A DNA stretch of 64,000 nucleotides, taken from contig CBFDEM010000058.1 in assembly GCA_965603825.1 (NCBI GenBank), forward strand, positions 620,001 through 684,000. The letters run 5' to 3'. Origin of the DNA: Blepharisma stoltei ATCC 30299 (Eukaryota; Protista; Ciliophora). The notes beneath the pieces were generated by a model that had not been told where the DNA came from, searched no databases, and was given only the letters and a program-made list of their open reading frames with translations. A program made the position numbers and the translations under genes. This document shows positions 26,037 to 64,000 of this stretch, piece after piece (the stretch's first letter is position 1; each line of letters opens with the position of its first letter).

Positions 26037-26083
26037 ATTTTTACGAAAATGAAATAATTTAAATTTCATTAATAATTAAAATA

Positions 26084-31520: not shown

Positions 31521-33545
31521 TTAATACTTGATATTTGTCATTCTGCAAATTAAGCATTTCATTGAATTAATTTGTGACATTATAGCTTGATAATCTTGGC
31601 TATCAATTTTACTTTGCAGAACTCTACCAAATATATCTGAAAAGCAATCAAATTCTTTCTCTGAAATCCCTAAATGCTGATGAGATGCTCTGATTTTTCT
31701 TCTCAATTCTAATCCAGCTTGCCCATTAAATACACGAAATAGACCATCCACAATCATAGTAAAATTTTCTATATTTGTATCCTCAAAACGATAGCCAATT
31801 ATATCATTCTCTAGTATTTCATCAAATAGAGAAGCAGTAAATTCATGTCAGAAATTGTCTCCATATTTCAAAATCAAGCTTTCGTTTTTTAAACACGATA
31901 ATTTTGAATTAAATTTCATTGCGTCATAATTACTAATGATTTTATTGAAATGCTTTCTAGTTGGCGATTCATTTTTTCTATTTCGGAACATTCTACTTGA
32001 TGGAGACTGTTCAAGACAAGCTGATTTATTTAAACAGCTGCAAACATTAGGACACTCATTCTTTCTCTGCTTAAAAATTGTGTTATACGTTTTATTACTT
32101 TGCTCTTTAAAGTTTACTGATCAGTGACTATTGTGTAAGCTGCTGACAGCGATTTTACTATCCCTCGCAAGAATTTCTTTTTCAATAACTTCACTTCTTA
32201 GATGCACTGAATTGCTTCTTATTCTAAAAAGCTTTTTCGGAGTACTGCATATTTTTTCTTGTCGGTCGCTAATATCAGAATCTTCATTGGCATCATTTTC
32301 TAAATCTGCTTCTATATGAAGCCCAGCAATTTGGTCTTTTTTAATATTATTTAAACTTTCTACAGAATATCTCCTCTTTGCTCATTTATTTTCATCTACT
32401 TTTAACTCATTTTTTTCTATTGTAGTCCATTCTTGAATATCTAAAAAAATTCAATTTTTATCTTGATTTTGCATAAAATCAACAACAAGCCCTTTAATCG
32501 GTTTTCCTTTAAATTCAGAATTATTGAGAAATGAGACCAGCTGATTTGTCATTTTTTCTATTTCTGGGATATTAATTTTGCTTTGGATAGCAAAGCAGCT
32601 ATTCTCATTTTTAGTTTGGACGGTAAATGCTTCAAAGTTTTTTGGCTCATTGGAACTTGTCCAAAAAATATTTTGTTTTATGCCGTTTGATATAGCTTCA
32701 TCAGAGGCACTTAAAGATAATCTATTGGGTTCCGGATCTAATGAATTTCTCAATAAAGGTGTTTTATTGCGGACTTTTACTATAGGAGACCTTTCTATTT
32801 TCTTGCTTGTAAAAGGGTTATTAATTGACTGTGATGTTTTGAGCATCAAATTAATATGCTTAAATTCTGTTATTTGAGGCTGAGACTTTTTTGCTTTATA
32901 TTTATACCTTTGTTTATTAATATTTGAAGACTTTTCTTGGAATTTCAAGAGATTTATAATAGAAAAATATTTTAATTTTTCGTTATGTTTTCACACAACT
33001 CTTGTGATTGATGCTGGATTTGGAGGCTTAATAAACTGCTGAATCATTGCAGAGTGATTTGAAGAATTTCAAAGTGTTTTTGCTTCTGCAATAGAGGACA
33101 GGACGATTGATTGACTATCGTCTTTATAGTAGAATAAAGGAGTCTCATTAGATTGCTTAAATTGATCAAAAAAATCATCATCATGGCTTTGTCTTGAAAT
33201 AATTCTTTTATTTTTGTTAGTTTTGATTAAATAAGGTGTAGGAATATTATCAGCCTTTATAAGTGTTATTGGGATGTTTAGCTTTATTCTATCAGTCTCA
33301 GAAATTTCAATTAAACGAAATAATATTTTGATTTTATTTTGCTCAGTCAATTTTGGTAATAAAGAACTCAATTTTTTTATATAAGAGCTGTGCCTGGGAT
33401 CTGTAAAACTTGCATTTGAGTCGTAGGTAATCTGAATCTTTGGAGTTGGAGAAATCAGTGAAGGCTTTGATGATTTATTTTCTTTTGCCAAAAATGAGGA
33501 ATTTTCGACAGAAATTGTTTTATTTTGCGTTTTTGTCTGTTCCAT
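31521..33545 (-). CDS. ATP-grasp-like + truncated hemoglobin fusion, copy 1 (674 aa)
   Basis: Three track ORFs share a frame, and I checked the gaps codon by codon (only TGA). C-terminal 2/2 globin ...RRKIRASHQHLGISEKEF..., with B10 = Phe. Confidence 0.88.
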
Positions 33546-33672
33546 ATTATTTTTTATTAATCAATATTTTTGGAAATCAAATTATCATAATATAAATAAT
33601 ACTTGACTATTATTTACAATATCTATTTACTAATACTTTTTTTTACATAAATTGATATTTAATAGCAGAATC

Positions 33673-35688
33673 TTATTTCGAATGCGATTGATTGCATACA
33701 AGCCATTTCATAGACCGTGTTTGAGACATTACAACCTGCAGATCTTGAGTCTCCATTTTATTATCTGCAAGACTCCTTTCAAAAATATCTGCAAAGCAGT
33801 CAAATTCTTTTTCAGAAATTCCCAATTTTTTGTGCACTCCTCTAACTCTTCTTCTGAATTCTAAATTAACTTGCCCATTAAGAACCTTAAATAAACCATC
33901 TATAATCATTGTAAAATTTTCCAATTTGGTGTCTTTGAATCTTTTATTTAATATATCATTGCCGAGAATACTATGAAAAAGGCAAATTATAAATTGATTT
34001 CAAAAACTGTTCCCGTACTTTAAAATTAAGCTTTCATTTCTTAAGTGTGAGAGCTTTGAGTTAAATTTGATAGCATCAAATTGATTTATTATATTTGTAT
34101 AGTGTTTTCTAATTGATGTATCATTATTTTCACTATTTGATGATAAATGTGGATTTTTACAATGATCAGCAAAATGGACTGAATTAATTTTTCTTGTTTT
34201 AAAAATCGTGCTATATGATTGAATGCTTTGCTCTTTAAGATTTACTAATAAATGTGCAGCACTTTGGCTTTGGTTTTTGAGGTTGTTAACTTTCTGCGTT
34301 ACTTTGCAGTATCTTTCTGCAATATCTTTTTCGTTTAATTCATTTTTTTGTACAGAAATTCTTTTTTTTCTTATCTTAAAAGGAAGTTTATCTTTTTCAG
34401 CATTAGTTTCTTCTTTTTCAAACTGTAAGATTTCATTTTCTTCTATATCAGGCTCACTTTCTGATTCCTCATATACGCTATTTCTGCTATGGTCTACAGA
34501 TTGGCTCCTCTCTGAAGATTTCATGGCCTTTCCTCTTCCTGGACACTCAACCGCTGATTTATCAGTCGTAATCCATTCTTGTAAATCCAAAAAAATTCAT
34601 TTTTTATCTACATTTTGTACAAAATCAAGAACAACTCCTTTAATAATTCTACCTTTAAATACAGAATTATTAAAAAAAGAAACAAGCTGATTCGCCATTG
34701 TGTCAATTTCTTGTATTTTAATTTTGCTTTGGACTGCAAAGCAACTGTTTGTATTTTTAGTTTGGACTAAAAAGCTTTCAAATCCTTTTGGCTCAGCTGA
34801 TTCATTAATTATGTTTTCATTTTCCTGGTCTGCTAATTCCATAAACGACCTCGAAATTAAAGATCTTGAAGCTTTAACTATAGAATTTCCAGAAAAATTG
34901 CAAAATGTATGTGCTAAGTTTTTCGATTTATTTGATTTTTTCTGAATTTTTATTTTGTAAGGGTTGTTTATAGATTTAGATGTTTTTTGTATAAAATCAG
35001 TGTATTTAAAATTATATAATTGGGAATAAGACCTATTTTTTTTTAGCTGCATTTGAGGTTTTATTGTAGAGTCTTCAGGTTTTTCGTGAAATTTCAGCAG
35101 ATTTATAATCAAAAAATATTTTGTTTTAGCATTTTGTTTCCACAGAATTCTAGTAATAGATACTGGATTTGATGAAGGCTTAATAAATTGCTGGATCATT
35201 GCTGGCTGGCTTGATGAGTTTCAAAGTGCTTTAGCTTTGGCTATTGAAAATAAGACCACAGAATGATTTTGAGCTTTATAGTAAAATAAAGGGCCATCTT
35301 CTGATGATTTAAACAAATTAAAAAATTCTTCATCAGCACATGGCTTTGAAATTATTTTTCCGTTTTTCTTCGTATGAATTAAAAATGATACTGGCATTTT
35401 ATCTACTCTTAACAGAGTAAGCGGAATATTTAGCCTCAAATTGTTGTCTGAATCATGATTATTGATTAAATGGGAAAATACATTGAATTTTTGGTGCTCT
35501 GGGAGTTTTGGTAGCAAAAAGTTAAGCTTTTTTATAAAAGAATTTTGCATAAGCTCTGTGCGGAGTCCGCTTATAACGGGTGCTTTATTTTTCAGAATTG
35601 ACAAATTTCATGAAGATCTACTTAATTGGTGATCTTTAGCAAACTCAGATAAGTTTTGATGATTTTCTAAATATTCTTGTCTGTCCAT
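33673..35688 (-). CDS. ATP-grasp-like + truncated hemoglobin fusion, copy 2 (671 aa)
   Basis: Four in-frame ORFs joined by TGA-Trp, ATG at 35688 (MDRQEY). Globin RRRVRGVHKKLGISEKEF, B10 = Phe. Confidence 0.88.
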
Positions 35689-35828
35689 TATTTACTCAAA
35701 TAAACAGCTAATAAAGAGTTGCTTATAAATATTTACAAATTAACAAATAGGGGATTTTCAACTCAAAAAAGTCATTTCAGAATATTATTTTAAAAAATTT
35801 GAAAATTAAAAAATTTAATTTTTATGCA

Positions 35829-37856
35829 TTACCTGCATATCAAGCATTTCATTGATTTTATTTGCATCATTATTGCATGCTTGTCTTCTTCTTCAACCTG
35901 GAATTCCACCAATGTTTTTTCAAAAAGATCTGAATAAGCATTAAATTCGTTTTCATTTATTCCTCTATTTAAATGAGACCCTCTTACTTTTCTTCTAAAT
36001 TCCAAACTTACATTTCCATTAAAAATTTTGAACATCCCAGTCACTATCATTTCAAAATTGTCTAAATTGCAGTTTTTAAAGTAAGAATAAAGCTGCTCGC
36101 TGCCTAAAACTTTATTATAAAGTGACAGAATAAAATTATTCCAAAATTGGTCTCCTCCGTATTTTTCGACTAAATTTTGTCTTTTAAGCTTGGCGACATG
36201 AGCATTTAAGGTCATTTCGTCAAAATTTTCAATAATTCCGGAAAAATGTTTTTGGGTCATATGGTGGCACTTGTCGTCCCATAGGGATTCTGAGATTTGC
36301 AGGCGTTTTTTGCCAACTGGAGTATTTGGAAGAGGGGTCATATCGTTTAATTGTGTATAAGAGGAGCTGCTGAGGTAGTTGTGAGGGCTTTCGGTTTGGA
36401 TGAAATTTGTGGAGGATGCTCTTAGGAGCTTTTTACTTGAGATTATTTGGTCGACTTTTTGGTTAACCTCAGCGCATCTTTGAAGCAGCTCTTTTTCATC
36501 AGTTATGCGTGGTCTTTCTTTAATGGTGTTTGATGGCTTTAATTTGACGGAAACTGTTTTTTGCCTTTTTATTATATCCTTTGGTGGCTCTTCAGATTTA
36601 ATTTCTTCATCTTCAAAATTTGATACTTTCTTATGGCATATAAGTGATCTGCTTCTCCTCGGCTTATTTATCCTTGGCATTATTATTTTTTTCTTTTCAA
36701 TTTCATCTGCCAAATATTCCTTACAATCCAGCAAAAACCAATTATTGTTTCTATTTTGAAGAAAATCCAGCACAATAGCTTTTAGACTATTCTGGAATAT
36801 TTCATTATTTAAAAACTGTACAATTTGATTGACCATATTTTCTATCTCTGGGATTTTCACTAAACTTTCTATTGCATAGCAGCTTTCTGAGTCTTTTGTA
36901 GTTACTATAAATTCTTTATAAGTGCCTTCTCCAATAATTTTTGATAGTTCTTCAGTAAGACTGCATTGTTTAGTCTCCCTCGAAAATATTCCAGGAGAAG
37001 CGGCTCGATTTATTCCTAAATCTTGTTTAGGGAGTTCTGAAAATGAAGCATTTTTTAAATTTTTATTTTTTATCGGAGTTTTTGCAACTTTATAAGGATT
37101 ATTGACTGATTGGGATGAAGGTAGCATCATATCTCTGTACTTAAATTCCGATAAATTAGTCGAAGAAATTGATCTTTTATGCACAAGTTTTTGCTGCTTT
37201 GGGGAAATTTTTTTCAATTTCTTTTCTTTTTTGGCTTTATTTACGATGTTGAAATATTTATTTTTTAGACCTTGTCGCCATAAAACTCTTGTAAAAGAAA
37301 TTGTGCTTGACCGCCCTTGGATAAATTGCTGCATAAACGCATTAGTTTCGGATGGATTTCATATTTTTAAAGCACTGTCAATTGTAAATACCGCTACTGT
37401 ATCTTGGCCAGGACTTTTAAAACAGAATAGTGGGCAGTCAGAATCCTTTTTTTCTTGTGTCAGATTAAAAAAGTCTTCACTTGTGCAGGGCTTTGAGTGT
37501 ATTTTTCCATCCTTTTTTGTACGAATAATGCATGAGGTTTCTTCGAGCTTAATCAGAGTAGTTGGAACACTGGCGTTAATATTGACTTTATTTGAAAATT
37601 TTGCGAGTAAAGAAAATAAGTTGAGCCTTGGGCTGAATTCAGACTTTGGCAGCAAGTTGTTTAGTTTAGATATATAGCAATTTTGGCTGCTATCAGGACA
37701 TAGCTTGTTACCAAAGTTTGAGCCTCTTAAGCCAGTTTTTTTAGAAAAGTCATGAATAAAATTAATTATATCTTCCCTTATATGAGTAATCTCATCTCTC
37801 TCAATTGTGTTTTGGTGATAGTCCTTAAGATGCTGAAGGATTATTGGTACTTCCAT
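35829..37856 (-). CDS. ATP-grasp-like + truncated hemoglobin fusion, copy 3 (675 aa)
   Basis: Two in-frame ORFs joined at TGA 37359. LVEKYGG..FW....SLYNKV...YF...FNG...RGSH..GINENEF. Confidence 0.92.
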
Positions 37857-38122
37857 TATTTATTTACTGACTTTTAGATCAATAAATCATAAGACCTTAT
37901 CACTTTTAATTTTAGGCTAATTCATATGAGAGCTTATTATAAATTACTATCCTGAGCCTTATTGTATATTCCTAAGATCTATGATCAATCAATCCACATA
38001 TTTATTGGTTCAGTTTTATTTTTCTGCAGTCTCAATAATGAGATTATTTTTCTAATCAGAAATAATTCTAAATGCAAATTTTTAGTTTTTATATAATTAA
38101 AGAATTTTTCAGTTTTATAAAG

Positions 38123-40108
38123 TTATTTGCATATTAAACACTTCATGGATTTGATTTGTGACATAATCATTTGCCGATCGTCCTCCTCAATATGGAATTC
38201 TTTTAGAGTGCTTTCAAAAATGTTAGAGTAGGAGTCAAATTCTTTTTCACAAATTTTTAAATTTTGATGGGCAGATCTTACTGTTCTTCTGAATTCTAGA
38301 GTAGCATTTCCATTGAAAACTTTAAGCATGCCTCTGATAATCATATTTAAGCTTGAAGTGCTAAAATACTTGCACAAAGATTCATTTTCTATTACTTTTT
38401 TGTATAGTGACATAATAAATTGATTCCAAAACTCGTCTCCTCCATAGTGGTGTATTAAATCTTTTCTTTTGACTTTGATTAATTCGCATTGGACTTTCAT
38501 CTCATCTAAATTATTATTAGTCTCTAATAGATGCCTTTGAGCATGGTCATTTACTTTATGGAATAATAAAGTATTCTTAGCATTTTCTATGTTTGGCTTT
38601 TGTTTAAAAATTGGACAAGATATTAAAAATTCATCGTTACGGTTCATATCTTTTTGGATTTTATCCAAATAAGTGCATGTATTCTGATTGAATCTCATTT
38701 GATAAGCTTTAATGCTTTCTTCTTTAAAATTTACTTTATTGAGATGTCTAGCCGGCTTTAGACTAGTTAAATAATCAATTTTTTGGCTTAGCTTATTGCA
38801 TCTTTCAAATAAATCTTGTTCACTACTGGCTTCTATTGTTCGATTTAGGTTAAAATTCTTCTTCATTTTGAAAGGTAGAGTTGCTGTAGTAGGAGTTTTA
38901 CATCTTATTGACTCCAAAGGTATTATATTTTGGATGCCTTCTGATAGTGATCTTTTATTGCGCGGAGGAGAAAGAATTTTTGGTTCTGATTCACTATTTA
39001 AACTATCTATTGGAGAACTACTCTGAGTTGAGTATTCTTTGCAGTCTAAAAATACTCATTTTCCATTCTTATTGTAAATAAAGTCTGCTACAAGATATTT
39101 TAATTTTTCATCTTTGCAAAAATGGTTATTTAAAAAAGTTACAATCTGATTGATCATATCATCGATTTCTGGAATTTCAGACTTGTTCTCTGTTACTATA
39201 TATTCTTCTTGTGATTTGGTGCTCACAATATAAGTGATAGGCATTTTGCAAGGAGATAATGATTTAGATCTATTTTCAGCTATTTTTTCACAAGATCATT
39301 TATTTTCATTCATAATAGCACTGGAGGAGCGGATATCTTTTTTTCTATTTTTTTGAGCTATACAGAATTGGGTATTATGAGATTTTTTAGTTTTAGGTAT
39401 CATATGAGAATATCTGAATTTTGAAAAATGGTTAGTTTTACCTATATTATTGCTAGATGCTTGAGAAATCTTTGGCTTGCTTTCAACCAATCTTGTGTTT
39501 TGTATTGATTTACTTGCTATGCAAAAATATTTATTCTCATTTCCATCCCTTCAAAGAACTCTAGTTATAGATGGGACAATTGAATAGCCATTTATAAATT
39601 TTTGCACTAAAATTGGTTCATTTCTTGCCTTTTTCCAAGCATTTTCTGCAGCCTCTATGGAATAAAATAGCTGAATATCTTTAAGTGGAGACTTAATACA
39701 AAAAAGTGGATTTTTTTCCTGGGTATTATTTTGATTAATTGAAAAAAAATCCTTTTCATGGCAGTTTCTAGCATAAATACGCCCATTTTTCTTTGTTTGT
39801 ATAATATTGTTGATCCCACTTTTGTTGTCTTTTATCATACTGGTAGGTATGTTTATATAAAACTTCCCTAAGTTAGAGTATAACAGAAATAAGCTATAAA
39901 TATCAAGGTGGCTTTCTTTAGAACGTGACAGCATCAAATTAATGGTAGCAGAAGAAGAAAGATCATTGAAATCTTTGAAAGAGCTGTTGAGACAAGATTT
40001 AAATTGATTAAAGTGTGAAGGATTTTGAATACTAGAAGGAATTTTGCTTAGCTTTTCTAACTTTACAGACTTTTTTGAGGTGATAGGAGAGGATAATGAA
40101 GGGTCCAT
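38123..40108 (-). CDS. ATP-grasp-like + truncated hemoglobin fusion, copy 4 (661 aa)
   Basis: Four in-frame ORFs joined at TGA 39551, 39296 and 39056. Globin with RSAHQNL. Confidence 0.9.
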
Positions 40109-40594: not shown

Positions 40595-42679
40595 TTATCT
40601 TGCAATAAGCCCTTTCATCGATTTTAATTGGACTATAATCAAGTCTCTATCCTCTTCAGACACATTAAAATCCATCATATTTCCAATAAAAATTTCAGCA
40701 AAAAGGTTAAACTCGCTTTCTGCAATTTTAAGTTTTAAATTCAAATGAACTGCTCTAATCTTCCTTCTAAACTCGAGATTTACATTCCCAGAAAAAAATC
40801 TAAACATTCCTTTAATAATTTTTTCAAAATTTTCCAAACTTGTAGCTTTAAAATGCTTATTAAGAATTTCATTTGCTAGAACTTTTTGATATAAAGACAA
40901 TAAAAAATGGTTCCAAAAATCTATTCCACCATATTTTTCAACCAAATTTACTTGTCTATATTTCGATACCCTTGCGCATGTAACCATTTCGTCGAAGTTG
41001 TTAACTATATTTACGAAATGTTTTCTAACGTGAGAATAGCTGGGTTCTTTCCAAAGAATATTATTTCTTGTTTCTTGATTAGGATTTTTATTTGCTCTTA
41101 AAAGAGAATTGAATTGAGAGCTACCAAAAGCTTTATTGCTAATGGACCCACTCTCTTTTAAGCTGAATTTTTTGATGCGTATAAATTGGCTCACTTTTAT
41201 GGCTTCTGAGAATTTTTTAACTGATTTTAAATCTTGAAAGTCTTCGCTTAGGTTAATATTAAATAATGACTTGCCATTTTTCTTTTTCAAAGATGAGCTT
41301 CTTTTGGATTGCATTGTTTGGACATCATTCATGTTTGAATTATGTTCACTTTCTCCAACAAAATGTCCTTCGTCTGGCATCTGCAGTGTACTGAAAGATT
41401 GTGATTTTTTTATTCCTAGCATTTGCTTTTTAACTTTCCTTCTATCTGGGCACAAATTTGGACTTATTTCAATTGAATGCTCTCTGTAATCCAATATAAT
41501 CCAATCCTTTTTATAGTCTTGCATAAAATCAATCACAATTCCTTTAAGCTGATTTTGATTATTAAAAACAAAAGTATTTAAAAAAATTACGATTTTATTC
41601 ATAATTTTTTCAATTTCTGGGATACTTCTGTAGCTTTCAGTTGCAAAGCAGCTTTCAGGATTCTTGGTAATTACAAAATAATGCTTAGTTTCCTCCTCTT
41701 TAAATACTTTGGACAGTATGCTTGTTTGCGCCAATAGCTCATTGTTGAAAATATCTATATCAGTTTCTTCATCTGATTTTATTATTTTCAAGTCTTTATT
41801 ATGCGGAAGACAAGTTAAAGAATGTGATCGGAAATTCCTAATTTTCGGAATATTTATTGGCTTAGTGCCAATGGATGGAAGCTGGCTTGATCTTTGATTT
41901 ATCTTGTGATATGGAACATCAAGGGTATCAGATTTATTTCTTATATCTGAAAATTCTTGCCAGCTGCAATAGCTCCTTTGCTCTTTAAATTCATATTCAG
42001 AAGAATCTGGCTGTAAGAAATCTTGGGAGATTTTTGGTAAATTTCGATTTTTTACCTGGTATTTATTTTTATTATTAATAATAAAATATTTGCTTTTCAT
42101 ATTTTTTCTCCACAATAATCTCAAAATTGTAGCCGGATTTGATTGATTTTTTATAAAATATTGAATAAAAGAGCCATATTCTGCTTTTTCTCAGGCTGAA
42201 ATTGCATCCCCGAGAGAAAATAAAGCTTTAGTGCATTGATTCTTTTGCTTTAAGCAGAAAACAGGGAAATTTTCATTTATCCCTTCAAAAATGCCAAAAA
42301 ATTCTTGATCATCAGATTTCTTTGAGCACACAAATCCACGATCATCTGTATAAATTAAATATGGTTTCATATCTAAGTCATTTATTTTTAGGAGAGTTGT
42401 TGGAATATTAATTTTGCACTTTAAATCACCAGCGTGAGCTGCGAGCAGTCAATAAAAATCCAGTTTATCTTGCGTTTTTGGAAAGAAGTTATTTATCCTG
42501 TTGATGTACTCATTATGAGCCAATTCAGGGATTCTTGACTTCTGTTTAATTCCACGCAAAAGCCCTTTTTGAAAGGACTCAAGTATAAGATTGCCGAGGT
42601 CTTCTTGATATTTGGATATTTCTTTCAAAAAATGCTCGTTTTTTAGCTCTTTTAGAATTGCTGGAATTTCCATCTTCAT
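40595..42679 (-). CDS. ATP-grasp-like + truncated hemoglobin fusion, copy 5 (~694 aa)
   Basis: In-frame join through TGA 42449 and ~42191. Globin RAVHLNL. Confidence 0.9.
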
Positions 42680-49876: not shown

Positions 49877-49963
49877 TTATGTTCTAATTATAGCTAAAAT
49901 TCCTTCCATCTCTTCTGTTATAAAAAAATAAAAACATCTTTAAATTATTAATTAAAATAAAAA

Positions 49964-52024: not shown

Positions 52025-52448
52025 GTAATTTTTATAATTTTTAATCTTTAAAATTATTAAAATTATTGTCTGCAAATCAGAGTGATTTTTATTGTCCTAA
52101 TATATGAGTATATCTATCAATACAATAGAAGTAAAATATACCAAAAATAGCCACAAAAATATTTAAAATTATAAAAAGAAATAATTATTCTATTTTAAAG
52201 CTGAAAGATTATTAAAGATATCATGAAAATAAATTAATAAAATCTTTTAAGCTTAAGAAGAATATATCCAAATTCACAAGCCATTTGAGCTGCTATTTTT
52301 TGAATTGTTTATAAAAAATCATTGAGCTATTTTGAAACTTATAAATGGTTTCCGCAAATTTTTATCCCGTTTAATCCTCTATATATTTTATAATTTTTAA
52401 TAATTTGATATCAAATTCTTAATTAAACTGAATTTAATTTAGAACAAT

Positions 52449-54407: not shown

Positions 54408-54840
54408 TTCGAATTTATTTTAAGGTTTTAATTAGCTTTCAATAACCATTTATTGGCAGGTTAATTTACAGTTAATAGATAATTATTAAGAGAAATTTAT
54501 TTGATATTATCATATGTTGTATATTTTTGAAAATTATATTATTTATGTATATGTAATTGTTTAGAAGTTTTGGCTTTCTAAATTTTATTATTTTATTGAG
54601 AATTGAAATGGTGAATTTAATAATGTGAAATTTAATATATCACTTGGGAAATTGGCTGAATATACAAAAGTTGATTTATTTGGTATTTTTGATGATTTTT
54701 ATTATGCAAATTATATTTTTCAGGCCCATAGATAATAATTTTAAATTAAACCTTTAATCACTAATAATAAAAATCTTATACGAATAATTATTTATATTGA
54801 TAATAATTTGAGCAATAATAAATAAAAATATTAATTTACT

Positions 54841-56778
54841 TTATGAATTCCCTGCATGAAATTGGCATATCAGACATCTCATCGATCTGATCTGCGTCAT
54901 TATCACTCTTTTATCCCCTTCTTCAATTTTGAACTCATTCAATGTACTTTCAAAAAAATCCGAATACACATTAAACTCCTTTTCACTAATCCCCATATTT
55001 TGATGTGCTGCCTTTATTCTTCTCCTAAACTCCAACGTGGCACACCCATTAAAAACCTTAAACATCCCTACAATTATCATATCCAAATTTCTCCCATTAA
55101 AAAAAGTATGTAGATTTGACTCTTTTGACACAATTTTTTTATATAAAGACCGGATAAATTGGTTCCAAAAATCATCGCCTCCGTATTTTCCTACCAAATT
55201 TTGATGCTTTACCTTAAGAAGCTCAGTATTCATGTTCATTTCGTCAATTCTGCCTATGACGTCTGCAAAACATTTGTGAATGTGGAGGTTGTCGTCGTTT
55301 TTTCATAATGAATTTGAGGTAGGCTGAGGGGTATTGGAGACTAAAGGACTTATAACATGCTCTGCTTCTAGATTTGGAGTGGCTGGCTCAATTATTGTGC
55401 CGTGTCTTGCATTATATCTGGTTTGGTAAGATTTGATGCTTTGCTCTTTGTCGTCTTTTATATAGGAAGGCTTTAAGTTTACAATTTTGCCTAATTTTTC
55501 GTTGACTTTGTGTCACCTGTCAAATAAGTCTTGCTCTTTGTTGCTGGCAGGACTGGGAGCAGGGAGCGGAGATGATCGAATCATAAAAGCGCAAGGGTGG
55601 CTATGCTCAGCATGAGTTAAGACTAGCGGATTAATTTTGGTCTCAGGTCGTAGAATGCTTTTCAGTATGTTTACATCCCCATTAGAGCTTGTCCGCCTTT
55701 TAATTTTTGATTTTTTTCCATTCTCATAAGGAGTTTTACTTCGTCCTACAGAAACTTCTTTACAATCCAGCAAAACTCATTTATGTTGTCTACAAGGAAT
55801 AAAATCCAAAATAATCCCATTTACCTCTTCTTCTTTATATACATTTGAATTTAAAAATAAAATCACTTGCTCTATAAGCATATCTAGCTCAGCTCCTTTG
55901 CTTGAGTCTTCTAAAACTAGTATGTTTTCGGGTATTTTAGGATTTACAATCAAATTATTTTGATCGTGAAAATGAAAATCTTTGAGGTCTGGGTGCCTTT
56001 CTTCTTGAAATTTATTTGCCGTCATTATCCTATCGGATCTTGTTTTTTCTCTTCTTAGAGTTCTAAAAGACATCGCAACTTTAAATGGGTTATTTATCGA
56101 CCTTGATGTCTGGTGCAGCATATCTGTATATTTAAAGTCTCCTAATAGACTTAAACTCTTTTTCCTCTGATACAAACTAGGCGTGGCAGGGGCCTTTTTA
56201 GGGCTTTCACTCATATTATTGGCAATATGAATTCTATTTATAATTGTAAAATATTTTGATTTCATGCCTGATCTTCATACAACTCTTATTATTGACCTCG
56301 GATTTGACTGACACTCTACAAAATTCTGCATCATAGCTGTTAGATCCTTAGCAGAATTTCAAAAATTTTCTGCATTTTCTTTAGAGTTAAACAAAATACT
56401 ATCTTTATTAGGAGATTTATACAAGTAGCCACGCCCTTCACAATTTTTGGTTTTATGCTTGAAAATAAAAAAATCGTTGTCTTTGCATTGCCTTGAACAA
56501 AGAATTCCATTATTTTTTGTTCTCAGTAAACAAGGGACTGATATTTCTTCTGATTTTATAAGTGTAGTAGGCAGATTAATGTTAAATTCTCCTGAATTAG
56601 CGTATAATGCAAAGAGAGTAAAAATATTGAGGGGTTTGCCATTTGCAAGCTTTGGGAGAATATTGAAATTCCTTGTAGCATGGTCTCCTGGCTTTTGATG
56701 AATATTTGTGGAGCTTCTTAACGAGGTTCTGCTAATTGATGCTGTGGTAGGCTCGGAGTGGATTTTAAGCTCTTCCAT
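54841..56778 (-). CDS. ATP-grasp-like + truncated hemoglobin fusion, copy 11 (645 aa)
   Basis: Four in-frame ORFs joined by TGA-Trp, ATG 56778 (MEELK). Globin KAAHQNMGI. Confidence 0.9.
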
Positions 56779-57193: not shown

Positions 57194-59155
57194 CTAAAGT
57201 ACTGTGTGTCTGCAAATTAGACATTTCATAGACTTGATCTGTGACATAATAACGTGCTTATCCCTCTCATCAACCTCAAACTCATCAAGAGTATCTTCAA
57301 ATATCTTTACATACAGCAAAAAATTACTTTCACTAATCCCTAACGACGTATGGGAAGACCTGACATTTCTCCTGAACTCCAATGTGGCGCATCCATTGAA
57401 AATTTTAAACATCCCGTCTACTATCATTTTCATATTTGGGTGCTTAAAATAGCTTTTTAATGATTCATAAGTCAGCACTTTTTGATATAAAGACCCTATA
57501 AACCGATTTCAAAACTCGTCTCCGCCGTATTTTCCCACAATATTGTGACTTTTTACTTTTAAAAGTTCAGTGTTCATCTTCATTTCGTCTAAATGATTGA
57601 TTCCGTCTGATATAAGCTTTCGGGTATGGTCAAGAATTTTGTCATTAAATACAGCATTTGTGGTTGATTCCTGCTTGGTAATGGATGGGGTTTCTATAAT
57701 AGAAGGTTCTGGTTTTGGCTGAGAGGAGTTAAATGAGTAATTTTCAAGCTGAAATCTGTTTTGATAAGACTTCATGCTTTGCTCTTTTAGATTGACGTCT
57801 TTTAAGTAGCTCATAGGATTTAGGCTTGCTATTTGTTCTAATTTTTCATTGACTTTGTTACATCTTTCAAGAAGCTCTTTTTCTGAACAGTTCATTTTGG
57901 CTTGAGTAAGCTTATTACGGGTAGTCCGAATCCTAAATGGGAGTTTAATTTTATCATCCACGACAGAATGGCGCTTTTCTTGTTCAATAGAATCAATTTC
58001 TGAGCATATAGGAGAATCTGGCTTGCTTTCACATAGTTTCAATGTAACAGAAGACTTGCTTCTCCGTTTCTGAGGCAATTTAGCATCATTTCTTGCTAAA
58101 TCAGAAATTTCTGCAGGAAGTTTGCTATTTAAACTAATTTCTTTACAATTGAGAAATACTCATTTATTTTCTTTATCATTTAAAAATTCAAAAATAGCTC
58201 CTTTCAGCTCTTCTTCTTTAAAAACGTGCGCATTTAAAAAATATACGATTTCGTTAATCATTAATTCTATTTCAGGGACCTTATTTTTGCTTTCTACAAC
58301 AACAAAGCCTTCTGGGTCATTTATATTGATAATTTGTTTTTTCTTTTTATGTATTTCTGCTGATGAGTCTTCTGATCTTGATTTTTTAGGTAACTGTGGC
58401 TCATCTATAATTATTTCTGATGATGCCACTTTCGGTCTTTCTTTTAGGTTCGATTTTGACAGAGAATTTACTTTGAAAGGATTATTTATAGATTTTGACG
58501 TCCTAAACATCATATCTGTATACCTGAAATCAATACTCTGAGACACATTTTTTTTCCTTTTGAAAGATGATGCAGGACAAGTAACTCTTTTTTGAGTATC
58601 TCTTGACCGAATTATAGGCTTATCACAACTAATTATGCTATAATACTTAGACGCCATTCCTAGCCTCCACAATACCCTTGTTATTGAAACAGGCTTCGAA
58701 ATGCATTCTACATGACACTGCATTATCCCTGATAAATCCTTGGAAGATTTCCAAAAATCCTCTGCGCTTGTTTTCGATTGAAAAACAAGGCTTTCTCTGA
58801 ACAAAGACTTGTATAAGTAAATTTGTGAGTCTGGGGTTTTATTTTTGTGACTGAAAACAAAAAACTCATTGTGGCTGCAGGATCGGCAGTGAAGCATACC
58901 ATTGCTTTTGGTCCTGAGTAAGCAGTGGTTTGGAAGGTCTTCGGACTTAATGAGGGTGGTAGGGATATTTACATTGAAATTTCCAGAGTTGGAATAGAGG
59001 GCAAAGAAGTTATAGATATTGATAGGTTTTCCATTAAATAGCTTTGGGAGGGAGTTGAGTCCTTTTTTAGGGGTTTCTGTGAATTTTTGATGTGTAATTG
59101 CGTATGAGGTTTTATGGGAATTGTGATCTGGGCTGGATTTAAGCTCTTCTTCCAT
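57194..59155 (-). CDS. ATP-grasp-like + truncated hemoglobin fusion, copy 12 (653 aa)
   Basis: Three in-frame ORFs joined at TGA 58160 and 57509, both at family-conserved W. Globin RSSHTSLGI. Confidence 0.92.
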
Positions 59156-59696
59156 CAAGCTTTATAAATTATGTATAAGCCACGAAAGATGGTCATAAGT
59201 TTGAATTTAATAAAGGTTATTTAGATGCGAAATTTTTTATAAAAAATACAAGAAAAGTGCGCAATATCGCTTGTGTTTGATATAAAAAGACAATGAGTTT
59301 GAGAATTTATAGATACTTATCGGTATTTTGTAATTTTTTTTAGTTTATTATTTGTAAAAAAGATGAATAGTAGACAATTTTAAAGAACTTATTGAGAACG
59401 AATAAATTAAAAATATTGTGCCACTTCTATAGCAAATGACTATATTAATTACTGTTGCTTTAACTATTATTGTTTATATTGCAGATAGCAGAAATTAACA
59501 AATTTTATATTTGTCTTTATCAGGTCTGATACTTATTATAGTTGTATTTTATAAAAAATTTCTTATCTCAGACTATTATATAAACTTTTTGAAATTGCAT
59601 GGTTAAAAATTCCAAGCATTTTTTAAATATCAAAAAATATGATTTGAATTTATATAAAGAGTAAATATCAGCCATTTTAAAAATTTTCTGATTAAA

Positions 59697-59996
59697 ATGG
59701 GCTGCTGTCATGGGACGTCTCTTGATAAAAGTGAGCTTTTAATGAACAACAGCACAGACACCATATGTGATAACGCCGCAAAAGCTTTAGCTTTTAGCTC
59801 AGCTGAAACAAAATCAAAAATTAATAGCAGCATAGATTGGACAAACCCCTATCATAACTTAAGATTCTCTACTTTTTCAAATCAATCAAGGATTTCTGAC
59901 ACATTAAATATTGAAATTGTTGATTTGCCGCTACCCAGGGAATCTAGTCTAAGCAATAATCATACTCAATCAGAGAATAAAAATAATTATGTGTAA
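59697..59996 (+). CDS. Small protein, 99 aa, with N-terminal MGCC dual-acylation (myristoyl/palmitoyl) signal
   Basis: ATG-TAA ORF in an otherwise AT-rich spacer; MGCCHGTS N-terminus. Confidence 0.7.
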   Translation: MGCCHGTSLDKSELLMNNSTDTICDNAAKALAFSSAETKSKINSSIDWTNPYHNLRFSTFSNQSRISDTLNIEIVDLPLPRESSLSNNHTQSENKNNYV

Positions 59997-60068
59997 TAAT
60001 ATAAAATAAAATTTGTTAGAACTTAAAAAATATTTATCATAAATATATTTAATTATATTCAAATAAGC

Positions 60069-62129
60069 TTAAGCAGCTCCTTGTTTGAATATCAAAGTTT
60101 TCAACGACTTGATTTGCGCCATCATAATGCCTTTATCGAATTCATTTACTTGATATTCTAGCAGCGTATTTTCATAAATGTCACTGAAATTGTAAAACTC
60201 TTTTTCTGAAAGCCCCAAAGATTGGTGAGCTGCTCTTACTCTTCTTCTGAACTTAGGGCTAATTGTCCCATTAAATAAGTTAAACATCCCAGACACAATC
60301 ATTTTAAAATTTTCAAGCTTTGCGCCTTTAAAATATTTGCTGAGAAATTCACTTTCAAGGATTTTATTATAAAGTGACAGTATGAACTGATCCCAAAATA
60401 ATTTTCCACCATATTTTTCAACTAAATTTTCATTTCTAACTTTTGTCGCCTGCGTGTTTAGGTTCATTTCATCTAAATTATCAATAACGGCATTAATATG
60501 ATTTTTTGCATAAGTATCAACCATGTTAGAAAACGATGGATTTTTTGCTTTTGCGGAATTATCAATTTCTAATGTAGACTTATTTATGAGAGGGTTTTTG
60601 CTTCTTGATAAACTGAATTGGCATGACATAGGGCTGGCACCTGCTGAATAGAATGGGCACTTTTTGGCTTCGTTTAGGATTGTATTTGCGTTTATCTCAC
60701 CTTCTTTATTCAAGATTTTATCCGGTTTTTCATTTAATTTAGAGTATTTATCAAAAATCTCATTCTCAGGAATTTCAGCTAAAGGTATAAGCTTATTTGA
60801 TTTATTTCTGTATTTTCCAGCTAAAGAGCTTTGGGAATCTGCAAGTTTTCTAATTGACTCAAGTTCTGGCACTTCAGTAATAGACTCTTCTACTTTGAGA
60901 TGGCTTAAATCAACCGACATAGTTCTCTGTTTTCTGAAGCATGCTTTTTTAGGCTCAGGAGTTTTAAGAGATTCAAATCTGCTTAAATTTGTATTTAAGC
61001 CATTTGAAAATTCTTTACATTTTAATAAAAACCATTTTTTGTCCCTGTTTTGTATGAAATCAAGGACAATTCCTTTGACATTATCCTCTTTAAAAGGATG
61101 TCTATTTAAAAATTCAATAATTTGGGCAGTCATTGCGTTAATTTCAGAAAATTGCCCTTTGGTTTCAACGACGAAGCAATTTTCGATTTTTTTTGAATTT
61201 ACCAAGAAATCATTGCTGTTATCCTTGTTTAGTTGCCCAATTAATGTATTTTTTGCCTCTTTAGGGGGGTTAAGACTAGCATAAAATTCTTCAGGTGTGC
61301 TATGAGAAAATGACTGTGACCTCCTTTTTTGTTTTGATTTTAATACTGGCTCTTTCTCACTTTTTACCTTAAAAGGATTGTTTATAGATTGAGAGGTTTT
61401 TTTGAGCAAAGTCCTATAGTCAAAAGTAGAAAATCTTCTCTTTTGATTATAATTAGGATCAACAGCTATTGGCTTAGTTTCATTTTTTGCTGCTCGCTTT
61501 ATTTTTTTATGATTAATGATAGAAAAATATTTGATTTTCGCTCCATCTACCCACAAGACTCTTATAATTGATGGAGGGTTCGATAAACTCTGTATGCAAT
61601 GCTGCATTTTTGCAGGCTCTTTTGAAGAATTTCATACAGATTTGGCAGAATCATTTGAGTAAATAAGATCTCCTTCTTTATTCAAAGCTTTATAAACATA
61701 GAGTGAGGTATTTTCGTTATCCTCAAAAAATCGTTCAGTTTCTATATTAAAATATTCCTCCTCATTGCAAGGTCTTGCAATTACTTTCCCATTTTTTATA
61801 GTCTGAACTAAAAATGAAACAGGCAAATTTCCATTTCTGACCATTGTAGTAGGAATATTAACATTAAGACTACCGACGTCTGAATACTTTATAAAAGTAT
61901 CAAAAATGTCTAATTTTCTTTGATTAGAAGTATTTGACAGTAGGCTATTGAATTTCTTGGTATTATTTATTTTTAAGTATTCAGAACTGCTTCTGATACA
62001 TTTGACATAGGAGTCTGATGATTCCTTTATCAAAGAAACGATATCTTCTCTTGCATTTTTAATTTCTTCATGTTCAAAAGCTTTTTGATGAAGAAAATTC
62101 AGCTTCTCTAACTTAGTTGGCAAGTCCAT
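60069..62129 (-). CDS. ATP-grasp-like + truncated hemoglobin fusion, copy 13 (686 aa)
   Basis: Joined at TGA 61632. ATG 62129 (MDLP) matches the MEVP/MDIP starts of paralogs; an upstream in-frame ATG exists at 62201. KKCPFY; globin RAAHQSLGL. Confidence 0.92.
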
Positions 62130-62767
62130 TATTATAACAAAAAATGATATAAAAAAAAGTGTTGTATATGTAGGTATGCCAATTTGCTTAAACTTTTGCA
62201 TAATATGGGCTGTTAAAAATTATAAACTTGTTTTTTATTGTAATTGATTTCTAATTAATTTTATTTTCCAATAAATCTATTTTTTGAGATTTTATTTAAA
62301 ACAATTTTATATCAGAATTGCTATATTTAAGAGCTGAAGTAGTTATAAGAATTATAAATAAATTCTGGCATTTAAATAATGATTTCTGATGCTGTTAAAT
62401 TAAAACAGTTAATAAAATAAAAGGAATTCTGCAGAAAGAAAGAAAGAAATACGTATTTGCTCTAGAATTTTTATATTAAAAATAGAGCACCAAGATCAAC
62501 TTTATTACTGCGAGATTTCATCTATCTGTTCTTTTATTCATCTACTTCAAGTCATATGATTAATTCCCAAGTGATAGAATGCTGGCTTTGCATTCATTTT
62601 TTGTTAAAGATTCGTCATTGAAATAGACAATTCCCACATGATTATTTCATAGTCTCTAATTTATTTTTTTAATAAAACACTTATTAAGCTATCTATTAAC
62701 TTCAAAACTGTCCGTTTGCATTTTCGCTTAAATTTTACCTATGGTATATTTAATTATTCAATTAAAC

Positions 62768-64000
62768 TTAATCAGTTCCTTGTTTGCATACCAAAGTCTT
62801 CAATGACCTGATTTGCGCCATCATAATGCTTTTATCAAGCTCTTTTATTTGGAATTCTACCAGTGTGCTTTCGTAAATATCGCTGAAACTATTAAACTCT
62901 TTTTCAGAGAGCTCCAAAGGTTGATGAGCAGCTCTTATTCTTCTTCTGAACTTAGGATCAATTGTTCCATTAAATAAATTAAACATCCCAGAAACAATCA
63001 TTGTAAAATTTTCAAGTTTTGCACATTTAAAATATTTGATGAGAGAATTATTTTCAAGAATTTTATTGCAAAGCGAAAAGATGAATTGGTCCCAAAATGG
63101 TTTACCGCCGTATTTTTCTACTAAATTTTCGTTTTTAACTTTTGTCGCTTGTGTGCTTAGATTCATTTCGTCTAAATTATCAACAATGGTATTGATATGA
63201 TTTTTTACAAAAGTATCAACCATTGTAGAAAATGATGGTTTTTTTGCTTTTGCGAAAATTTCAGTTGGATGATTAATTATAAGGGGATTTTTTCTTCTTA
63301 CTGAGCTAAATAGACATGACATAGGGCTTGAGTCTGCAAAATAAAATGGGCATTTTTGAGGTGCTGTAGACATTGAATTTATGCTCATTTCGCCTTCATT
63401 ATTGGCGATTTTATCTGATCTTTCGTTTAATGTATAGCATTTATCATAAAGCTCATTTTCAGGTATAGGTTTGGGATTCGATTTATTTCTATATAACCCA
63501 GCTAAAGAGTTCGTAGATTTTACCACACTTTTGTTTAAATCTTGTTCTGGAGCTTCAACAATAAATTCTTCTACTTTAGAATTATCCAGACTACTATATT
63601 TGTTTCTTTGTCTTCTAAAGCATATGCTTATTGTTTCAGGAATTTTAATAGGCTGAGATCTTCTTAAGCTTGTATTTAAACTGTTTGCAAATTCTTTGCA
63701 TTTGAGCAAAAATCATTTTTTATCCCTGTTTTGTATAAAATCAAGCACAATTCCATTGATATAATTATCTTTAAAAGGATATTTATTTAAAAACTCAATG
63801 ATTTTGGCAGTCATAGCGCTAATTTCAGGAAATTGCCCTTTGGTCTCAACAACAAAACATTTTTCAGGGTTTTTTGGATTTACTAAAAATTCATTACTAT
63901 TGTCTTTACTAATTTGAGTAAATAAATTATTTTTTGTCTCTTTGGGGGGATTAATACTAGCATAAAATTCTTCAGATGTACTATAAGAAAACGACTTTGA
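62768..64000 (-). CDS. ATP-grasp-like + truncated hemoglobin fusion, copy 14 (5' part outside window)
   Basis: Close paralog of copy 13. The frame continues through TGA-Trp at ~63713 toward the window edge. QKCPFY; globin RAAHQPL. Confidence 0.9.

What the first reader, a model, noticed from the sequence alone, without database searches (positions are those of the whole stretch)
31521..64000. Tandem array of at least 14 intact genes fusing an ATP-grasp-like domain to a truncated hemoglobin: candidate eukaryotic globin-coupled sensor family
Seen in sequence: 13 complete and 1 partial head-to-tail, minus-strand, intronless genes of ~645-700 aa filling >32 kb. They are highly diverged from one another, yet the fragments of each share one frame and break only at TGA. 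The last ~115 aa are a group-I 2/2 globin: L..KYGG start, B-helix LY (TyrB10), CD1 Phe, and HisF8 in all 14 copies, followed by G(I/L)(S/T)E.EF. From CD1 to F8, copy 3 aligns without gaps to Paramecium caudatum trHb as I recall its sequence. Established: characterised ciliate trHbs (Paramecium, Tetrahymena) are ~120-aa single-domain proteins, and globin-coupled sensors are best known from prokaryotes. Inference: a large N-terminal module coupled through a conserved helical segment (LW.D...H....I..IDEM..N....K.K..NL) to a heme domain suggests an O2/NO/redox-regulated protein family. I do not recognise this architecture from any described protein. Standard-code ORF calling shreds it, so it is easy to miss.
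Basis: partly seen in the sequence, partly recalled or inferred. Interest (0 to 1): 0.92.

Follow-up and report, generated by a model that had tools for sequence, protein, structure and literature searches.

The report
Haemoglobin fused to dynein-dock domain
The ciliate Blepharisma stoltei has a 16-gene tandem array (14 genes in this window), part of a family of over 50 genes. Each gene joins a small haem-type globin to a domain that anchors the ciliary motor in trypanosomes, which suggests, without proof, an oxygen- or NO-sensitive part of the ciliary machinery.

Summary
With TGA read as Trp, the Blepharisma stoltei nuclear code, window 31521-64000 holds 13 complete genes and 1 cut gene, all minus-strand, intronless and intact (645-710 aa). 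They belong to a 16-gene array, and a collinear 15-gene array lies on another contig.

The C-terminal ~115 aa are a group-1 truncated haemoglobin. The proximal His is invariant, a family profile hits only trHbs in the PDB, and the fold matches at Z 13.

The N-terminal ~310 aa have an ATP-grasp fold. [quoted passage not shown] The nucleotide-pocket Lys/Gln/Arg/Asp equivalents are kept, but the Mg-binding Glu/Asn pair is lost, so the domain is probably non-catalytic.

The architecture also occurs in Stentor and in many unnamed environmental proteins. All are annotated as hypothetical, and I found no paper describing it.

"Globin-coupled sensor" is unproven, and formal membership of that family fails. 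The most likely role is a haem sensor or scavenger tethered to ciliary microtubules, which is inferred only.

The scan found the same family earlier on another contig of this genome (s1-624626), with the same reading.

The parts
31521..33545 (-). copy c1, CDS incl. stop, 674 aa, 6 TGA-Trp; B10 = Phe
33673..35688 (-). copy c2, 671 aa, 4 TGA-Trp; B10 = Phe
35829..37856 (-). copy c3, 675 aa; long-form E-helix start; globin aligns gap-free from CD1 to F8 with the stand-alone trHb
38123..40108 (-). copy c4, 661 aa (= database protein P0012)
40595..42679 (-). copy c5, 694 aa
43083..45125 (-). copy c6, 680 aa
45364..47358 (-). copy c7, 664 aa
47783..49876 (-). copy c8, 697 aa
49964..52024 (-). copy c9, 686 aa; covered by contigs of runs X1-X4 up to about 52014
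52449..54407 (-). copy c10, 652 aa, no TGA; reference copy for all searches and models; covered end to end by contigs of runs X1-X4, with no joints
53358..54275 (-). c10 N-terminal DC4/TTL-like ATP-grasp-fold domain (aa 45-350), with a low-complexity insert at aa 186-281. Equivalents of TTL pocket residues: K123, Q153, R167, D331
52806..53357 (-). c10 linker (aa 351-534): mostly low confidence. Conserved R373-x-x-S376 basic motif, KEQSIKAYQ helix, and a long pre-A helix (aa 505-533)
52458..52805 (-). c10 C-terminal group-1 truncated haemoglobin (aa 535-650): Y556 = B10, F569 = CD1, H601 = F8 (codon 52605-52607)
54841..56778 (-). copy c11, 645 aa (= P0006); contigs of runs X1-X4 begin at 54855-54885
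57194..59155 (-). copy c12, 653 aa (= P0008)
60069..62201 (-). copy c13, up to 710 aa from the first ATG
62768..64000 (-). copy c14, cut by the window end. Complete in the genome (open frame C58:682771-684825, 685 codons). B10 = Cys. Two more copies follow, up to C58:690427

Best explanation
SHOWN: The region is a tandem array of old, intact and probably transcribed paralogous genes of Blepharisma stoltei. Each gene encodes a two-domain protein.
- N-terminal domain (~310 aa): an ATP-grasp fold of the DC4/TbDC65 family. [quoted passage not shown] The domain keeps the equivalents of the nucleotide-pocket Lys, Gln, Arg and Asp but has lost the Mg-binding Glu/Asn pair.
- Linker (~180 aa): largely disordered, with conserved basic-Ser motifs and helices.
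- C-terminal domain: a group-1 truncated haemoglobin with an invariant proximal His, a mostly conserved Tyr B10 and Phe CD1, and an apolar E7/E11 distal side.

INFERRED: The N-domain is a non-catalytic docking module that places the protein on ciliary or cortical microtubule structures, most plausibly at or near the outer-dynein-arm docking site. The haem domain binds O2, NO or another redox ligand there, and so reports or buffers the local gas or redox state for the beating machinery. The many diverged paralogues, each kept in the same order in two duplicated arrays, would serve different ciliary structures or conditions.
For: Genes:
- 14 open frames of about 2 kb in 70% AT DNA.
- TGA aligns with Trp columns.
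- dN/dS is 0.15-0.28.
- All 31 copies in the two collinear arrays are intact, with reciprocal best hits in the same order at 44-69% identity.
- Contigs of four runs cover c9, c10 and c11 and fall to zero in both spacers, with no joints.

Globin:
- The family profile hits 24 PDB sequences that are all group-1 trHbs; the best is Tetrahymena 3aq5 at E 1.4e-5.
- BLASTP against Blepharisma's own Pfam-positive trHb gives E 2e-12, and hhalign gives 98%.
- VIA Z is 13.6 to THB1 and 12.8 to the Paramecium and Tetrahymena trHbs.
- His F8 is present in 30/30 close and 45/46 distant family members.

N-domain:
- AF2 pLDDT is 82 with the core above 90.
- An exhaustive structure search puts dDC4 at Z 18.0 and TbDC65 at Z 16.4, then a gap to generic ATP-grasp enzymes at Z 12 or below.
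- A 72-sequence profile hits 'ODA dDC4' at E 2.4e-6, TbDC65 at 3.5e-3 and TTL at 0.033.
- Residue conservation is given.

DC4 biology:
- DC4 binds the DC1/DC2 coiled coil and the ODA alpha heavy chain.
- Its loss slows swimming.
Against: - There are no localisation, haem-binding or ligand data for any member.
- More than 50 highly diverged paralogues is unusual for a stoichiometric axonemal subunit.
- Globin-less Blepharisma paralogues exist (P0043, P0055, L006) and may be the true DC4 orthologues, leaving the fused family free to act elsewhere.
- Homology to DC4 shows shared ancestry and fold, not a shared binding site.
- Pfam Bac_globin is below its gathering score for every fused copy tested.
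- The kind of the sequencing runs (RNA) is a guess by the tool.
Confidence: 0.5

Rival explanations
1. Haem-regulated enzyme. The N-domain is an active ATP-grasp ligase or nucleotide-dependent enzyme, for example a TTL-like tubulin-modifying enzyme. Its activity is switched by ligand binding at the C-terminal globin, making it a true globin-coupled enzyme.
For: The equivalents of TTL K150, Q183, R202 and D318 are conserved in 13/13 close and 33-53 of 59 distant members, by residue (mapping from the TTL alignment). Unlike DC4, which has Tyr or His at that position, the ciliate family keeps the Asp of the D-F motif. The conserved KTS..INNPF motif aligns with the TTL strand that carries R222.
Against: The equivalents of the Mg-binding Glu331/Asn333 pair are not conserved. 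The first is Asp, Gly, Asn or Ser in the close family and Lys, Ser, Gly or Ala in the wider family; the second is Lys. There is no Pfam TTL or ATP-grasp hit. The closest relatives are structural docking proteins. The alignment to TTL is weak (E 0.033), and the TTL residue numbers are recalled from memory.
Confidence: 0.13
2. Tethered detoxifier, not a sensor. The globin works as an NO dioxygenase, nitrite reductase or oxygen/ROS buffer, as proposed for many group-1 trHbs. The N-domain only anchors it where it is needed, for example to protect cilia or cortex of a pigmented, photosensitive, microaerophilic ciliate.
For: Group-1 trHbs with Tyr B10 are classically linked to NO detoxification (established knowledge; discussed in the papers read). 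Tyr B10 is kept in 28/30 close members. High copy number and tandem amplification fit a dosage-type function.
Against: The polar E7/E11 residues used by NO-dioxygenating trHbN are replaced by apolar residues or deleted. Simple dosage does not explain why a dozen diverged paralogue types were each kept after array duplication. A highly expressed stand-alone 'bacteria-like globin' already exists in this species.
Confidence: 0.2
3. Haem-free globin fold. The C-terminal domain has become a structural or protein-interaction module and no longer binds haem.
For: Pfam scores are below threshold. The second Gly-Gly motif is changed to F-N-G. B10 is lost in 3 of the 14 window copies and varies in distant members.
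Against: The proximal His is the best-conserved residue of the whole protein family, present in 75 of 76 members. Phe CD1 and the basic pre-F residues are also kept. Such a pattern has no obvious reason without haem.
Confidence: 0.08
4. Decaying or non-functional repeats, or an artefact of reading TGA through.
For: None beyond the fragmentation of the frames under the standard code.
Against: The published genetic code has UGA = Trp. TGA lies in Trp columns. All 31 array copies are open over about 2 kb, dN/dS is well below 1, and contig coverage is limited to the coding parts.
Confidence: 0.01

Closest known systems
Group-1 truncated haemoglobins of ciliates and algae (Tetrahymena pyriformis 3aq5, Paramecium caudatum 1dlw, Chlamydomonas THB1 4xdi), and Blepharisma's own stand-alone trHb (L002/L004)
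   Same: 2-on-2 fold (Z 12.8-13.6, rmsd 2.7-2.9 A over 112-114 aa). His F8, Tyr B10 and Phe CD1 are present, as is the N-terminal K-Y-G-G motif, shared with the Blepharisma stand-alone trHb together with the following F-W.
   Different: It sits at the C-terminus of a ~650-aa protein. E11 is apolar, and the E7 region is apolar or shortened by 3 residues. The second Gly-Gly is F-N-G. It has a conserved F-R-R before helix F and a Cys-rich C-terminal end. It is below the Pfam gathering score.
[quoted passage not shown]
   Same: ATP-grasp-like fold (Z 18.0 and 16.4). Shared sequence motifs include L-Q-x-F-I-x-P...S-x-x-R-V-x-W, with profile E 2.4e-6. Both have an N-terminal folded domain followed by a long extension.
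   Different: DC4 has no globin. Trypanosomatids have two paralogues, whereas Blepharisma has over 50. The ciliate family keeps the Asp of the D-F motif, which DC4 has lost. The location of the ciliate proteins is unknown.
Tubulin tyrosine ligase and TTLL enzymes
   Same: Same fold (Z 9.8-13.2). Equivalents of K150, Q183, R202 and D318 are conserved.
   Different: No Pfam TTL hit. The Glu/Asn Mg site is lost, and a ~95-aa low-complexity insert lies in the central part.
Globin-coupled sensors of bacteria and the oxygen-sensing adenylate cyclases of trypanosomatids
   Same: A haem globin joined to a second module in one chain. There is a eukaryotic precedent for globin-based O2 sensing.
   Different: Those have an N-terminal 3-on-3 sensor globin and an enzymatic or MCP transmitter. 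Here a 2-on-2 globin is C-terminal and the partner is probably non-catalytic.
Androglobin (metazoan cilia- and sperm-associated chimeric globin)
   Same: A chimeric globin linked to ciliated cells (abstracts listed).
   Different: Unrelated partner domain (calpain-like) and a permuted 3/3 globin; no shared ancestry of the fusion.
Other trHb chimeras (Streptomyces trHb-monooxygenase, raphidophyte nitrate reductase with 2/2Hb, multi-unit trHbs of ciliates)
   Same: They show that 2/2 globins do occur in fusions, including T1 chimeras noted in silico in ciliates.
   Different: The partners are different. I could not read Hade et al. 2017, so I cannot exclude that members of this family were listed there.

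Membership tests
Group-1 truncated haemoglobin (T1 / trHbN; Pfam PF01152) | 2-on-2 alpha-helical fold | tested here: met
   VIA Z 13.6 to THB1 (rmsd 2.7 A, 114 aa) and Z 12.8 to Paramecium and Tetrahymena trHb. Foldseek TM 0.69-0.77 by target.
Group-1 truncated haemoglobin (T1 / trHbN; Pfam PF01152) | Proximal His F8 | tested here: met
   Present in all 14 window copies, invariant in 18/18, and found in 75/76 members across the wide family.
Group-1 truncated haemoglobin (T1 / trHbN; Pfam PF01152) | Tyr B10 and Phe CD1 | tested here: met
   Tyr B10 in 11/14 window copies (Phe in c1 and c2, Cys in c14). Phe CD1 in 14/14. In close members, 28/30 and 29/30 respectively.
Group-1 truncated haemoglobin (T1 / trHbN; Pfam PF01152) | Gly-Gly hinge motifs at AB and EF | tested here: inconclusive
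   The AB motif is present (K-Y-G-G, degenerate in c1 and c2). The EF position reads F-N-G, with only the last Gly conserved.
Group-1 truncated haemoglobin (T1 / trHbN; Pfam PF01152) | Sequence-model membership | tested here: inconclusive
   Pfam gives 14.7-18.6 bits against a cut-off of 21, or no hit. The family profile finds only trHbs in the PDB (E 1.4e-5). BLASTP to a Pfam-positive Blepharisma trHb gives E 2e-12.
Group-1 truncated haemoglobin (T1 / trHbN; Pfam PF01152) | Haem binding | not testable with these tools
   Needs recombinant protein and spectra.
Globin-coupled sensor (GCS) | N-terminal 3-on-3 sensor-type globin followed by a C-terminal transmitter (MCP, GGDEF, kinase, cyclase) | tested here: not met
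   The globin is 2-on-2 and C-terminal. The partner is N-terminal and DC4-like, with no transmitter domain in Pfam.
ATP-grasp superfamily | ATP-grasp fold | tested here: met
   All 50 best chains of an exhaustive search are the DC4 pair or ATP-grasp proteins.
ATP-grasp superfamily | Catalytic Mg-binding acidic/Asn pair on the last strands | tested here: not met
   The equivalents of TTL E331 and N333 are variable and Lys respectively. The mapping rests on the weak TTL alignment.
DC4 / TbDC65 (ODA docking-complex subunit) | Sequence and fold similarity to dDC4 | tested here: met
   Profile E 2.4e-6 to 9e78_5K 'ODA dDC4' and 3.5e-3 to TbDC65. Z 18.0 and 16.4, 4-6 units above any other chain.
DC4 / TbDC65 (ODA docking-complex subunit) | Binding to the DC1/DC2 coiled coil on the doublet, and axonemal location | not testable with these tools
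   Known for Leishmania only.
TTL/TTLL (Pfam PF03133) | Model membership | tested here: not met
   No Pfam hit. The profile hit to TTL is only E 0.033.

The most novel reading that the evidence does not exclude
These proteins are the gas or redox receptor of heterotrich ciliates. [quoted passage not shown] This would explain the oxygen- and light-dependent swimming responses of Blepharisma, Stentor and their relatives. The dozen conserved paralogue types would tune different ciliary organelles.
Probability: 0.18. Interest if true: 0.9.

Novelty: new variant of a known kind. Interest (0 to 1): 0.68.

Why it matters
Globins joined to signalling or enzymatic partners are well known in bacteria and rare in eukaryotes. 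The only cilia-linked globin described so far is metazoan androglobin, whose function is still unclear. This is a large, conserved and apparently expressed family in which a haem domain is joined to a relative of a motor-docking protein that was only recognised in 2025.

If the proteins sit on the axoneme, they offer a direct and testable link between oxygen, NO or redox state and ciliary beating. How ciliates perceive oxygen is an old open question. RNAi in Stentor and cryo-EM of doublets could test the link.

The family also extends the DC4 family into ciliates with a new architecture. The two collinear arrays give a clear case of paralogue types being retained for a long time after an array duplicated.

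Tried and rejected
Searches that gave nothing useful:
- Pfam on whole copies gave nothing usable.
- The narrow 13-sequence N-domain profile found nothing in the PDB. The Ploeotia and Thecamonas homologues alone also found nothing. Only the 72-sequence profile reached DC4.
- The search for homologous proteins with a diverse full-length alignment returned only two close hits because of its word limit, so it says nothing about range.
- The Atlas feature search says only 'Ciliophora, hypothetical'; its first attempt failed.
- An IQ-TREE run was killed for memory or time. The FastTree tree has many long branches and was used only for a coarse picture.
- The flanks of the two arrays share no genes, so a larger segmental duplication is not shown.
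- Hade et al. 2017 is not held in the library.
- No paper mentions the three Stentor gene ids.
- The taxa of the environmental members could not be established.

Not run:
- Complex prediction. I make no firm binding claim, and the DC1/DC2 partners of Blepharisma were not identified.

Rejected readings:
- Pseudogene array or standard-code artefact.
- Introns: no joints, and the frames are continuous.
- Bacterial origin.
- Formal GCS membership.

Full report
WHAT IS THERE

The window is contig C58:620001-684000 of a 41.46 Mb assembly in 64 contigs. The matching database proteins are from Blepharisma stoltei. The genome paper for this species reports a 41 Mb somatic genome, UGA reassigned to Trp, and 15-16 bp introns (PMC9942806).

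Under the standard code the region breaks into 34 ORF fragments. With only TAA and TAG as stops, the minus strand of 31521-64000 gives 14 head-to-tail open frames of 656-717 codons, the last cut by the window end.

There are 37 in-frame TGA codons. Of these, 29 fall in six alignment columns where the other copies carry TGG-Trp. TGA and TGG are used about equally (37:41), and the true stops are 12 TAA and 2 TAG. From the first ATG the products are 645-710 aa, and the spacers are 87-913 bp.

The copies are old. They share 26-68% aa identity (median 31%), and synonymous sites are saturated (median pS 0.72). Where dS can be estimated, dN/dS is 0.15-0.28. The globin part is the best conserved (median 43% identity) and the loop and linker the least (18-23%).

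In the genome the array has 16 intact copies (C58:651524-690427), so it runs about 6.4 kb past the window.

EXPRESSION

One study with four runs holds the region; the tool only guesses that they are RNA. I laid them on 50001-56000. In all four runs the contigs match c9, c10 and c11 at 99-100%. They stop at the ends of the coding parts and leave both spacers (about 52015-52450 and 54400-54855) uncovered. They show no joints, and depth differs consistently between neighbouring genes.

This is what separate, unspliced mRNAs would give and what DNA would not. It remains an inference, because the run type is not on record.

THE C-TERMINAL DOMAIN

Pfam Bac_globin is only sub-threshold on the fused copies. 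Scores are 14.7-18.6 bits against a cut-off of 21, though they cover positions 2-117 of 121, and two copies give no hit. Other evidence is decisive:
- An 18-sequence profile of the last 133 aa finds, in all PDB sequences, 24 hits that are all group-1 truncated haemoglobins. The best is Tetrahymena pyriformis trHb at E 1.4e-5. Tyr B10, Phe CD1 and His F8 are in register.
- Blepharisma has stand-alone ~118-aa trHbs that pass Pfam (35-37 bits). Copy c3 aligns to one of them at E 2e-12 and 27% identity, with no gap from CD1 to F8. The family profile aligns at 98% probability.
- In the AlphaFold model, residues 535-650 superpose on Chlamydomonas THB1 (Z 13.6, rmsd 2.7 A, 114 aa) and on the Paramecium and Tetrahymena trHbs (Z 12.8).

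His F8 is present in all 14 window copies, in 30/30 close relatives and in 45/46 distant ones. It is the most conserved position in the family. Tyr B10 is present in 11/14 window copies (Phe in c1 and c2, Cys in c14).

The distal E11 position is apolar. The start of helix E is three residues shorter in 7 of the 14 copies. The second Gly-Gly is F-N-G, and an F-R-R triplet before helix F is invariant.

The fused and stand-alone Blepharisma globins share the K-Y-G-G-D-x-F-W start. This points to an origin from the ciliate's own trHb lineage (inference).

THE N-TERMINAL DOMAIN

Pfam finds nothing. AlphaFold folds residues 45-185 and 285-350 with confidence, around a low-complexity insert. With a 72-sequence alignment the mean pLDDT is 82, and 193 of 319 residues score above 90.

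Structure searches give a consistent ranking:
- Foldseek's three best PDB matches are chains of trypanosomatid doublet-microtubule structures (E 5e-7 to 5e-6). ATP-grasp enzymes follow.
- An exhaustive VIA-align search of 48,161 chains ranks 9e78_5K first (Z 18.0, rmsd 3.5 A, 216 aa) and 9e5c_7c second (Z 16.4).
- There is then a gap to synapsin, Ddl, TTLL11, RimK and TTLL6 at Z 12.0-9.8. All 50 listed chains are the DC4 pair or ATP-grasp proteins.

At sequence level, the 72-member profile hits 9e78_5K, named 'distal DC4 | ODA dDC4', at E 2.4e-6. It hits 'TbDC65' at 3.5e-3 and TTL at 0.033. The shared motifs include L-Q-x-F-I-x-P...S-x-x-R-V-x-W.

According to Doran et al. [quoted passage not shown] It sits on the DC1/DC2 coiled coil and contacts the alpha heavy chain, and its loss slows swimming. 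PMC11971395 adds two points. pDC4 is needed for assembly of the proximal docking complex, and DC4 orthologues exist in other flagellates, including Chlamydomonas.

Using the TTL alignment, I mapped the equivalents of TTL pocket residues. The TTL residue numbers are from my memory of the published TTL structures. K150, Q183, R202 and D318 equivalents are conserved in 13/13 close members (the Asp once replaced by Glu) and in 33-53 of 59 distant members, by residue. The Mg-binding E331/N333 pair is not conserved: the first position is Asp or variable, the second is Lys.

The domain is therefore most likely a non-catalytic relative of TTL. It may still bind a nucleotide.

THE LINKER

The linker is mostly low-confidence in the model. 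It has conserved features:
- a basic cluster followed by Ser, just before the F-K-Y-T-D-M...K-T-S-x-S-I-N-N-P-F motif in the insert;
- an invariant Arg and a near-invariant Ser in K-R-R-x-x-S after the N-domain;
- a K-E-Q-S-I-K-A-Y-Q helix;
- a long helix leading into the globin.

The basic-Ser motifs resemble basophilic kinase sites. That reading is mine and is untested.

FAMILY AND HISTORY

A six-frame search of the genome finds about 50 full-length loci on 14 contigs, which is a lower bound.

An exhaustive profile search of 1.84 billion representative proteins with the N-domain gives 151 hits. Together with the proteins from the earlier search, 84 of 155 proteins also carry the C-terminal globin.

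Named sources are B. stoltei and Stentor coeruleus. The three Stentor proteins looked up all have both domains. Globin-less homologues occur in Thecamonas trahens and the euglenid Ploeotia vitrea. The rest are unnamed environmental sequences. Structure look-alikes in the ESM Atlas are hypothetical proteins of ciliates and oomycetes.

In a rough FastTree, the window's genes fall in an all-globin clade. Stentor proteins lie in neighbouring clades and the non-ciliate proteins lie outside. The fusion therefore predates the Blepharisma-Stentor split. This inference rests on a tree with long branches.

A second array of 15 intact copies lies on contig C22 (175423-212914). Eleven C58 copies have reciprocal best hits in the same order in C22, at 44-69% identity. 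These are c3-#2, c4-#3, c5-#4, c6-#5, c7-#7, c8-#8, c9-#9, c10-#10, c11-#12, c12-#13 and c15-#15, while c13 and c14 both match #14.

So an array of about a dozen already distinct paralogue types was duplicated long ago, and every member has been kept. The flanks are not shared.

WHAT IT MOST LIKELY DOES

Shown: the gene structure, both domain identities, the conservation of the haem ligand, and purifying selection.

Inferred: the DC4-like domain docks the protein to ciliary or cortical microtubule structures, and the haem domain binds a gas or redox ligand there.

I rank the possibilities as follows:
- a tethered sensor or modulator of the beating machinery is most likely;
- a tethered NO/O2 scavenger is next;
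- a haem-regulated enzyme is less likely, because the Mg site is lost;
- a haem-free globin is unlikely, because the proximal His is almost never lost.

None of these can be separated without protein work.

COMPARISON WITH WHAT IS KNOWN

The protein is a member of the T1 globin lineage by fold, key residues and homology, and a member of the DC4/TTL-like ATP-grasp lineage. It is not a globin-coupled sensor in the defined sense, since both the globin type and the domain order are wrong.

Eukaryotic globin-based O2 sensors do exist, for example the trypanosomatid oxygen-sensing adenylate cyclases. A review also notes in-silico chimeric T1 globins in ciliates (citing Hade et al. 2017, which I could not read).

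I found no paper on this fusion. The genome paper mentions only a single-domain 'bacteria-like globin'. NCBI holds correct gene models named 'unnamed protein product', and one paralogue has an automatic 'Globin family profile domain' name.

EARLIER NOTES OF THIS SCAN

After I had reached this reading, a word search showed that a follow-up agent had reported the same family and the same reading on another contig of this genome (s1-624626). Two first-reader notes also apply: s1-657695 covers the continuation of the array, and s1-657769 covers the altered ATP-grasp signatures. Both agree with what I tested.

VERDICT

This is a new variant of a known kind (chimeric globins), it is real, and it is probably functional. 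Its biological role is still inferred.

Noticed in passing
G000:C22:175423-212914 (loci L007, L011, L008, L012): A second tandem array of 15 intact fusion genes. It is collinear with the C58 array by reciprocal best hits at 44-69% identity, so the array was duplicated as a unit long ago and all members were kept. The flanking genes are not shared.
   Followed up: yes
L002:195-548 (+), L004:179-532 (-); L001, L003, L005: Blepharisma has two kinds of stand-alone ~118-aa globins. One is a canonical trHb pair that passes Pfam (35-37 bits). The other is a diverged group starting M-L-Y-R-Y-G that scores only 13-17 bits.
   Followed up: partly
L006:1068-2822 (+) = G000:C33:59567-61321: A 585-codon paralogue with the DC4-like N-domain but no globin. 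B. stoltei proteins P0043 and P0055 are similar. These may be the true DC4 orthologues of the ciliate.
   Followed up: partly
window 53280-53291 and 53736-53790 (c10), and the same columns in all copies: Conserved basic-Ser motifs: K-R-R-x-x-S after the N-domain, and a K/R cluster followed by Ser before F-K-Y-T-D-M. They resemble basophilic protein-kinase sites and are possible regulatory phosphorylation points.
   Followed up: no
window 31930-33129, 34103-34960, 57810-58643 (+) and others: Long plus-strand open frames (200-400 codons, many TGA) lie antisense to the fusion genes. They are even similar between the two arrays. I take them as by-products of the conserved sense strand and its composition skew, not as genes.
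   Followed up: partly
window 17865-19226 (+) and 26063-26959 (+): Ordinary housekeeping genes lie upstream of the array: a Prp31/Nop-domain protein and a CAF1-family ribonuclease.
   Followed up: no
protein P0002 (JGI metagenome, 401 aa, contig 1881 bp): An environmental fragment is 92% identical to c10. It shows that a close relative of this Blepharisma strain, carrying the same gene, occurs in a public metagenome.
   Followed up: no
proteins P0132 (Thecamonas trahens), P0123 (Ploeotia vitrea), and Atlas clusters from Oomycota: The DC4-like domain occurs widely in flagellated eukaryotes without any Pfam model. This agrees with the remark in PMC11971395 that DC4 orthologues exist outside kinetoplastids.
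   Followed up: partly
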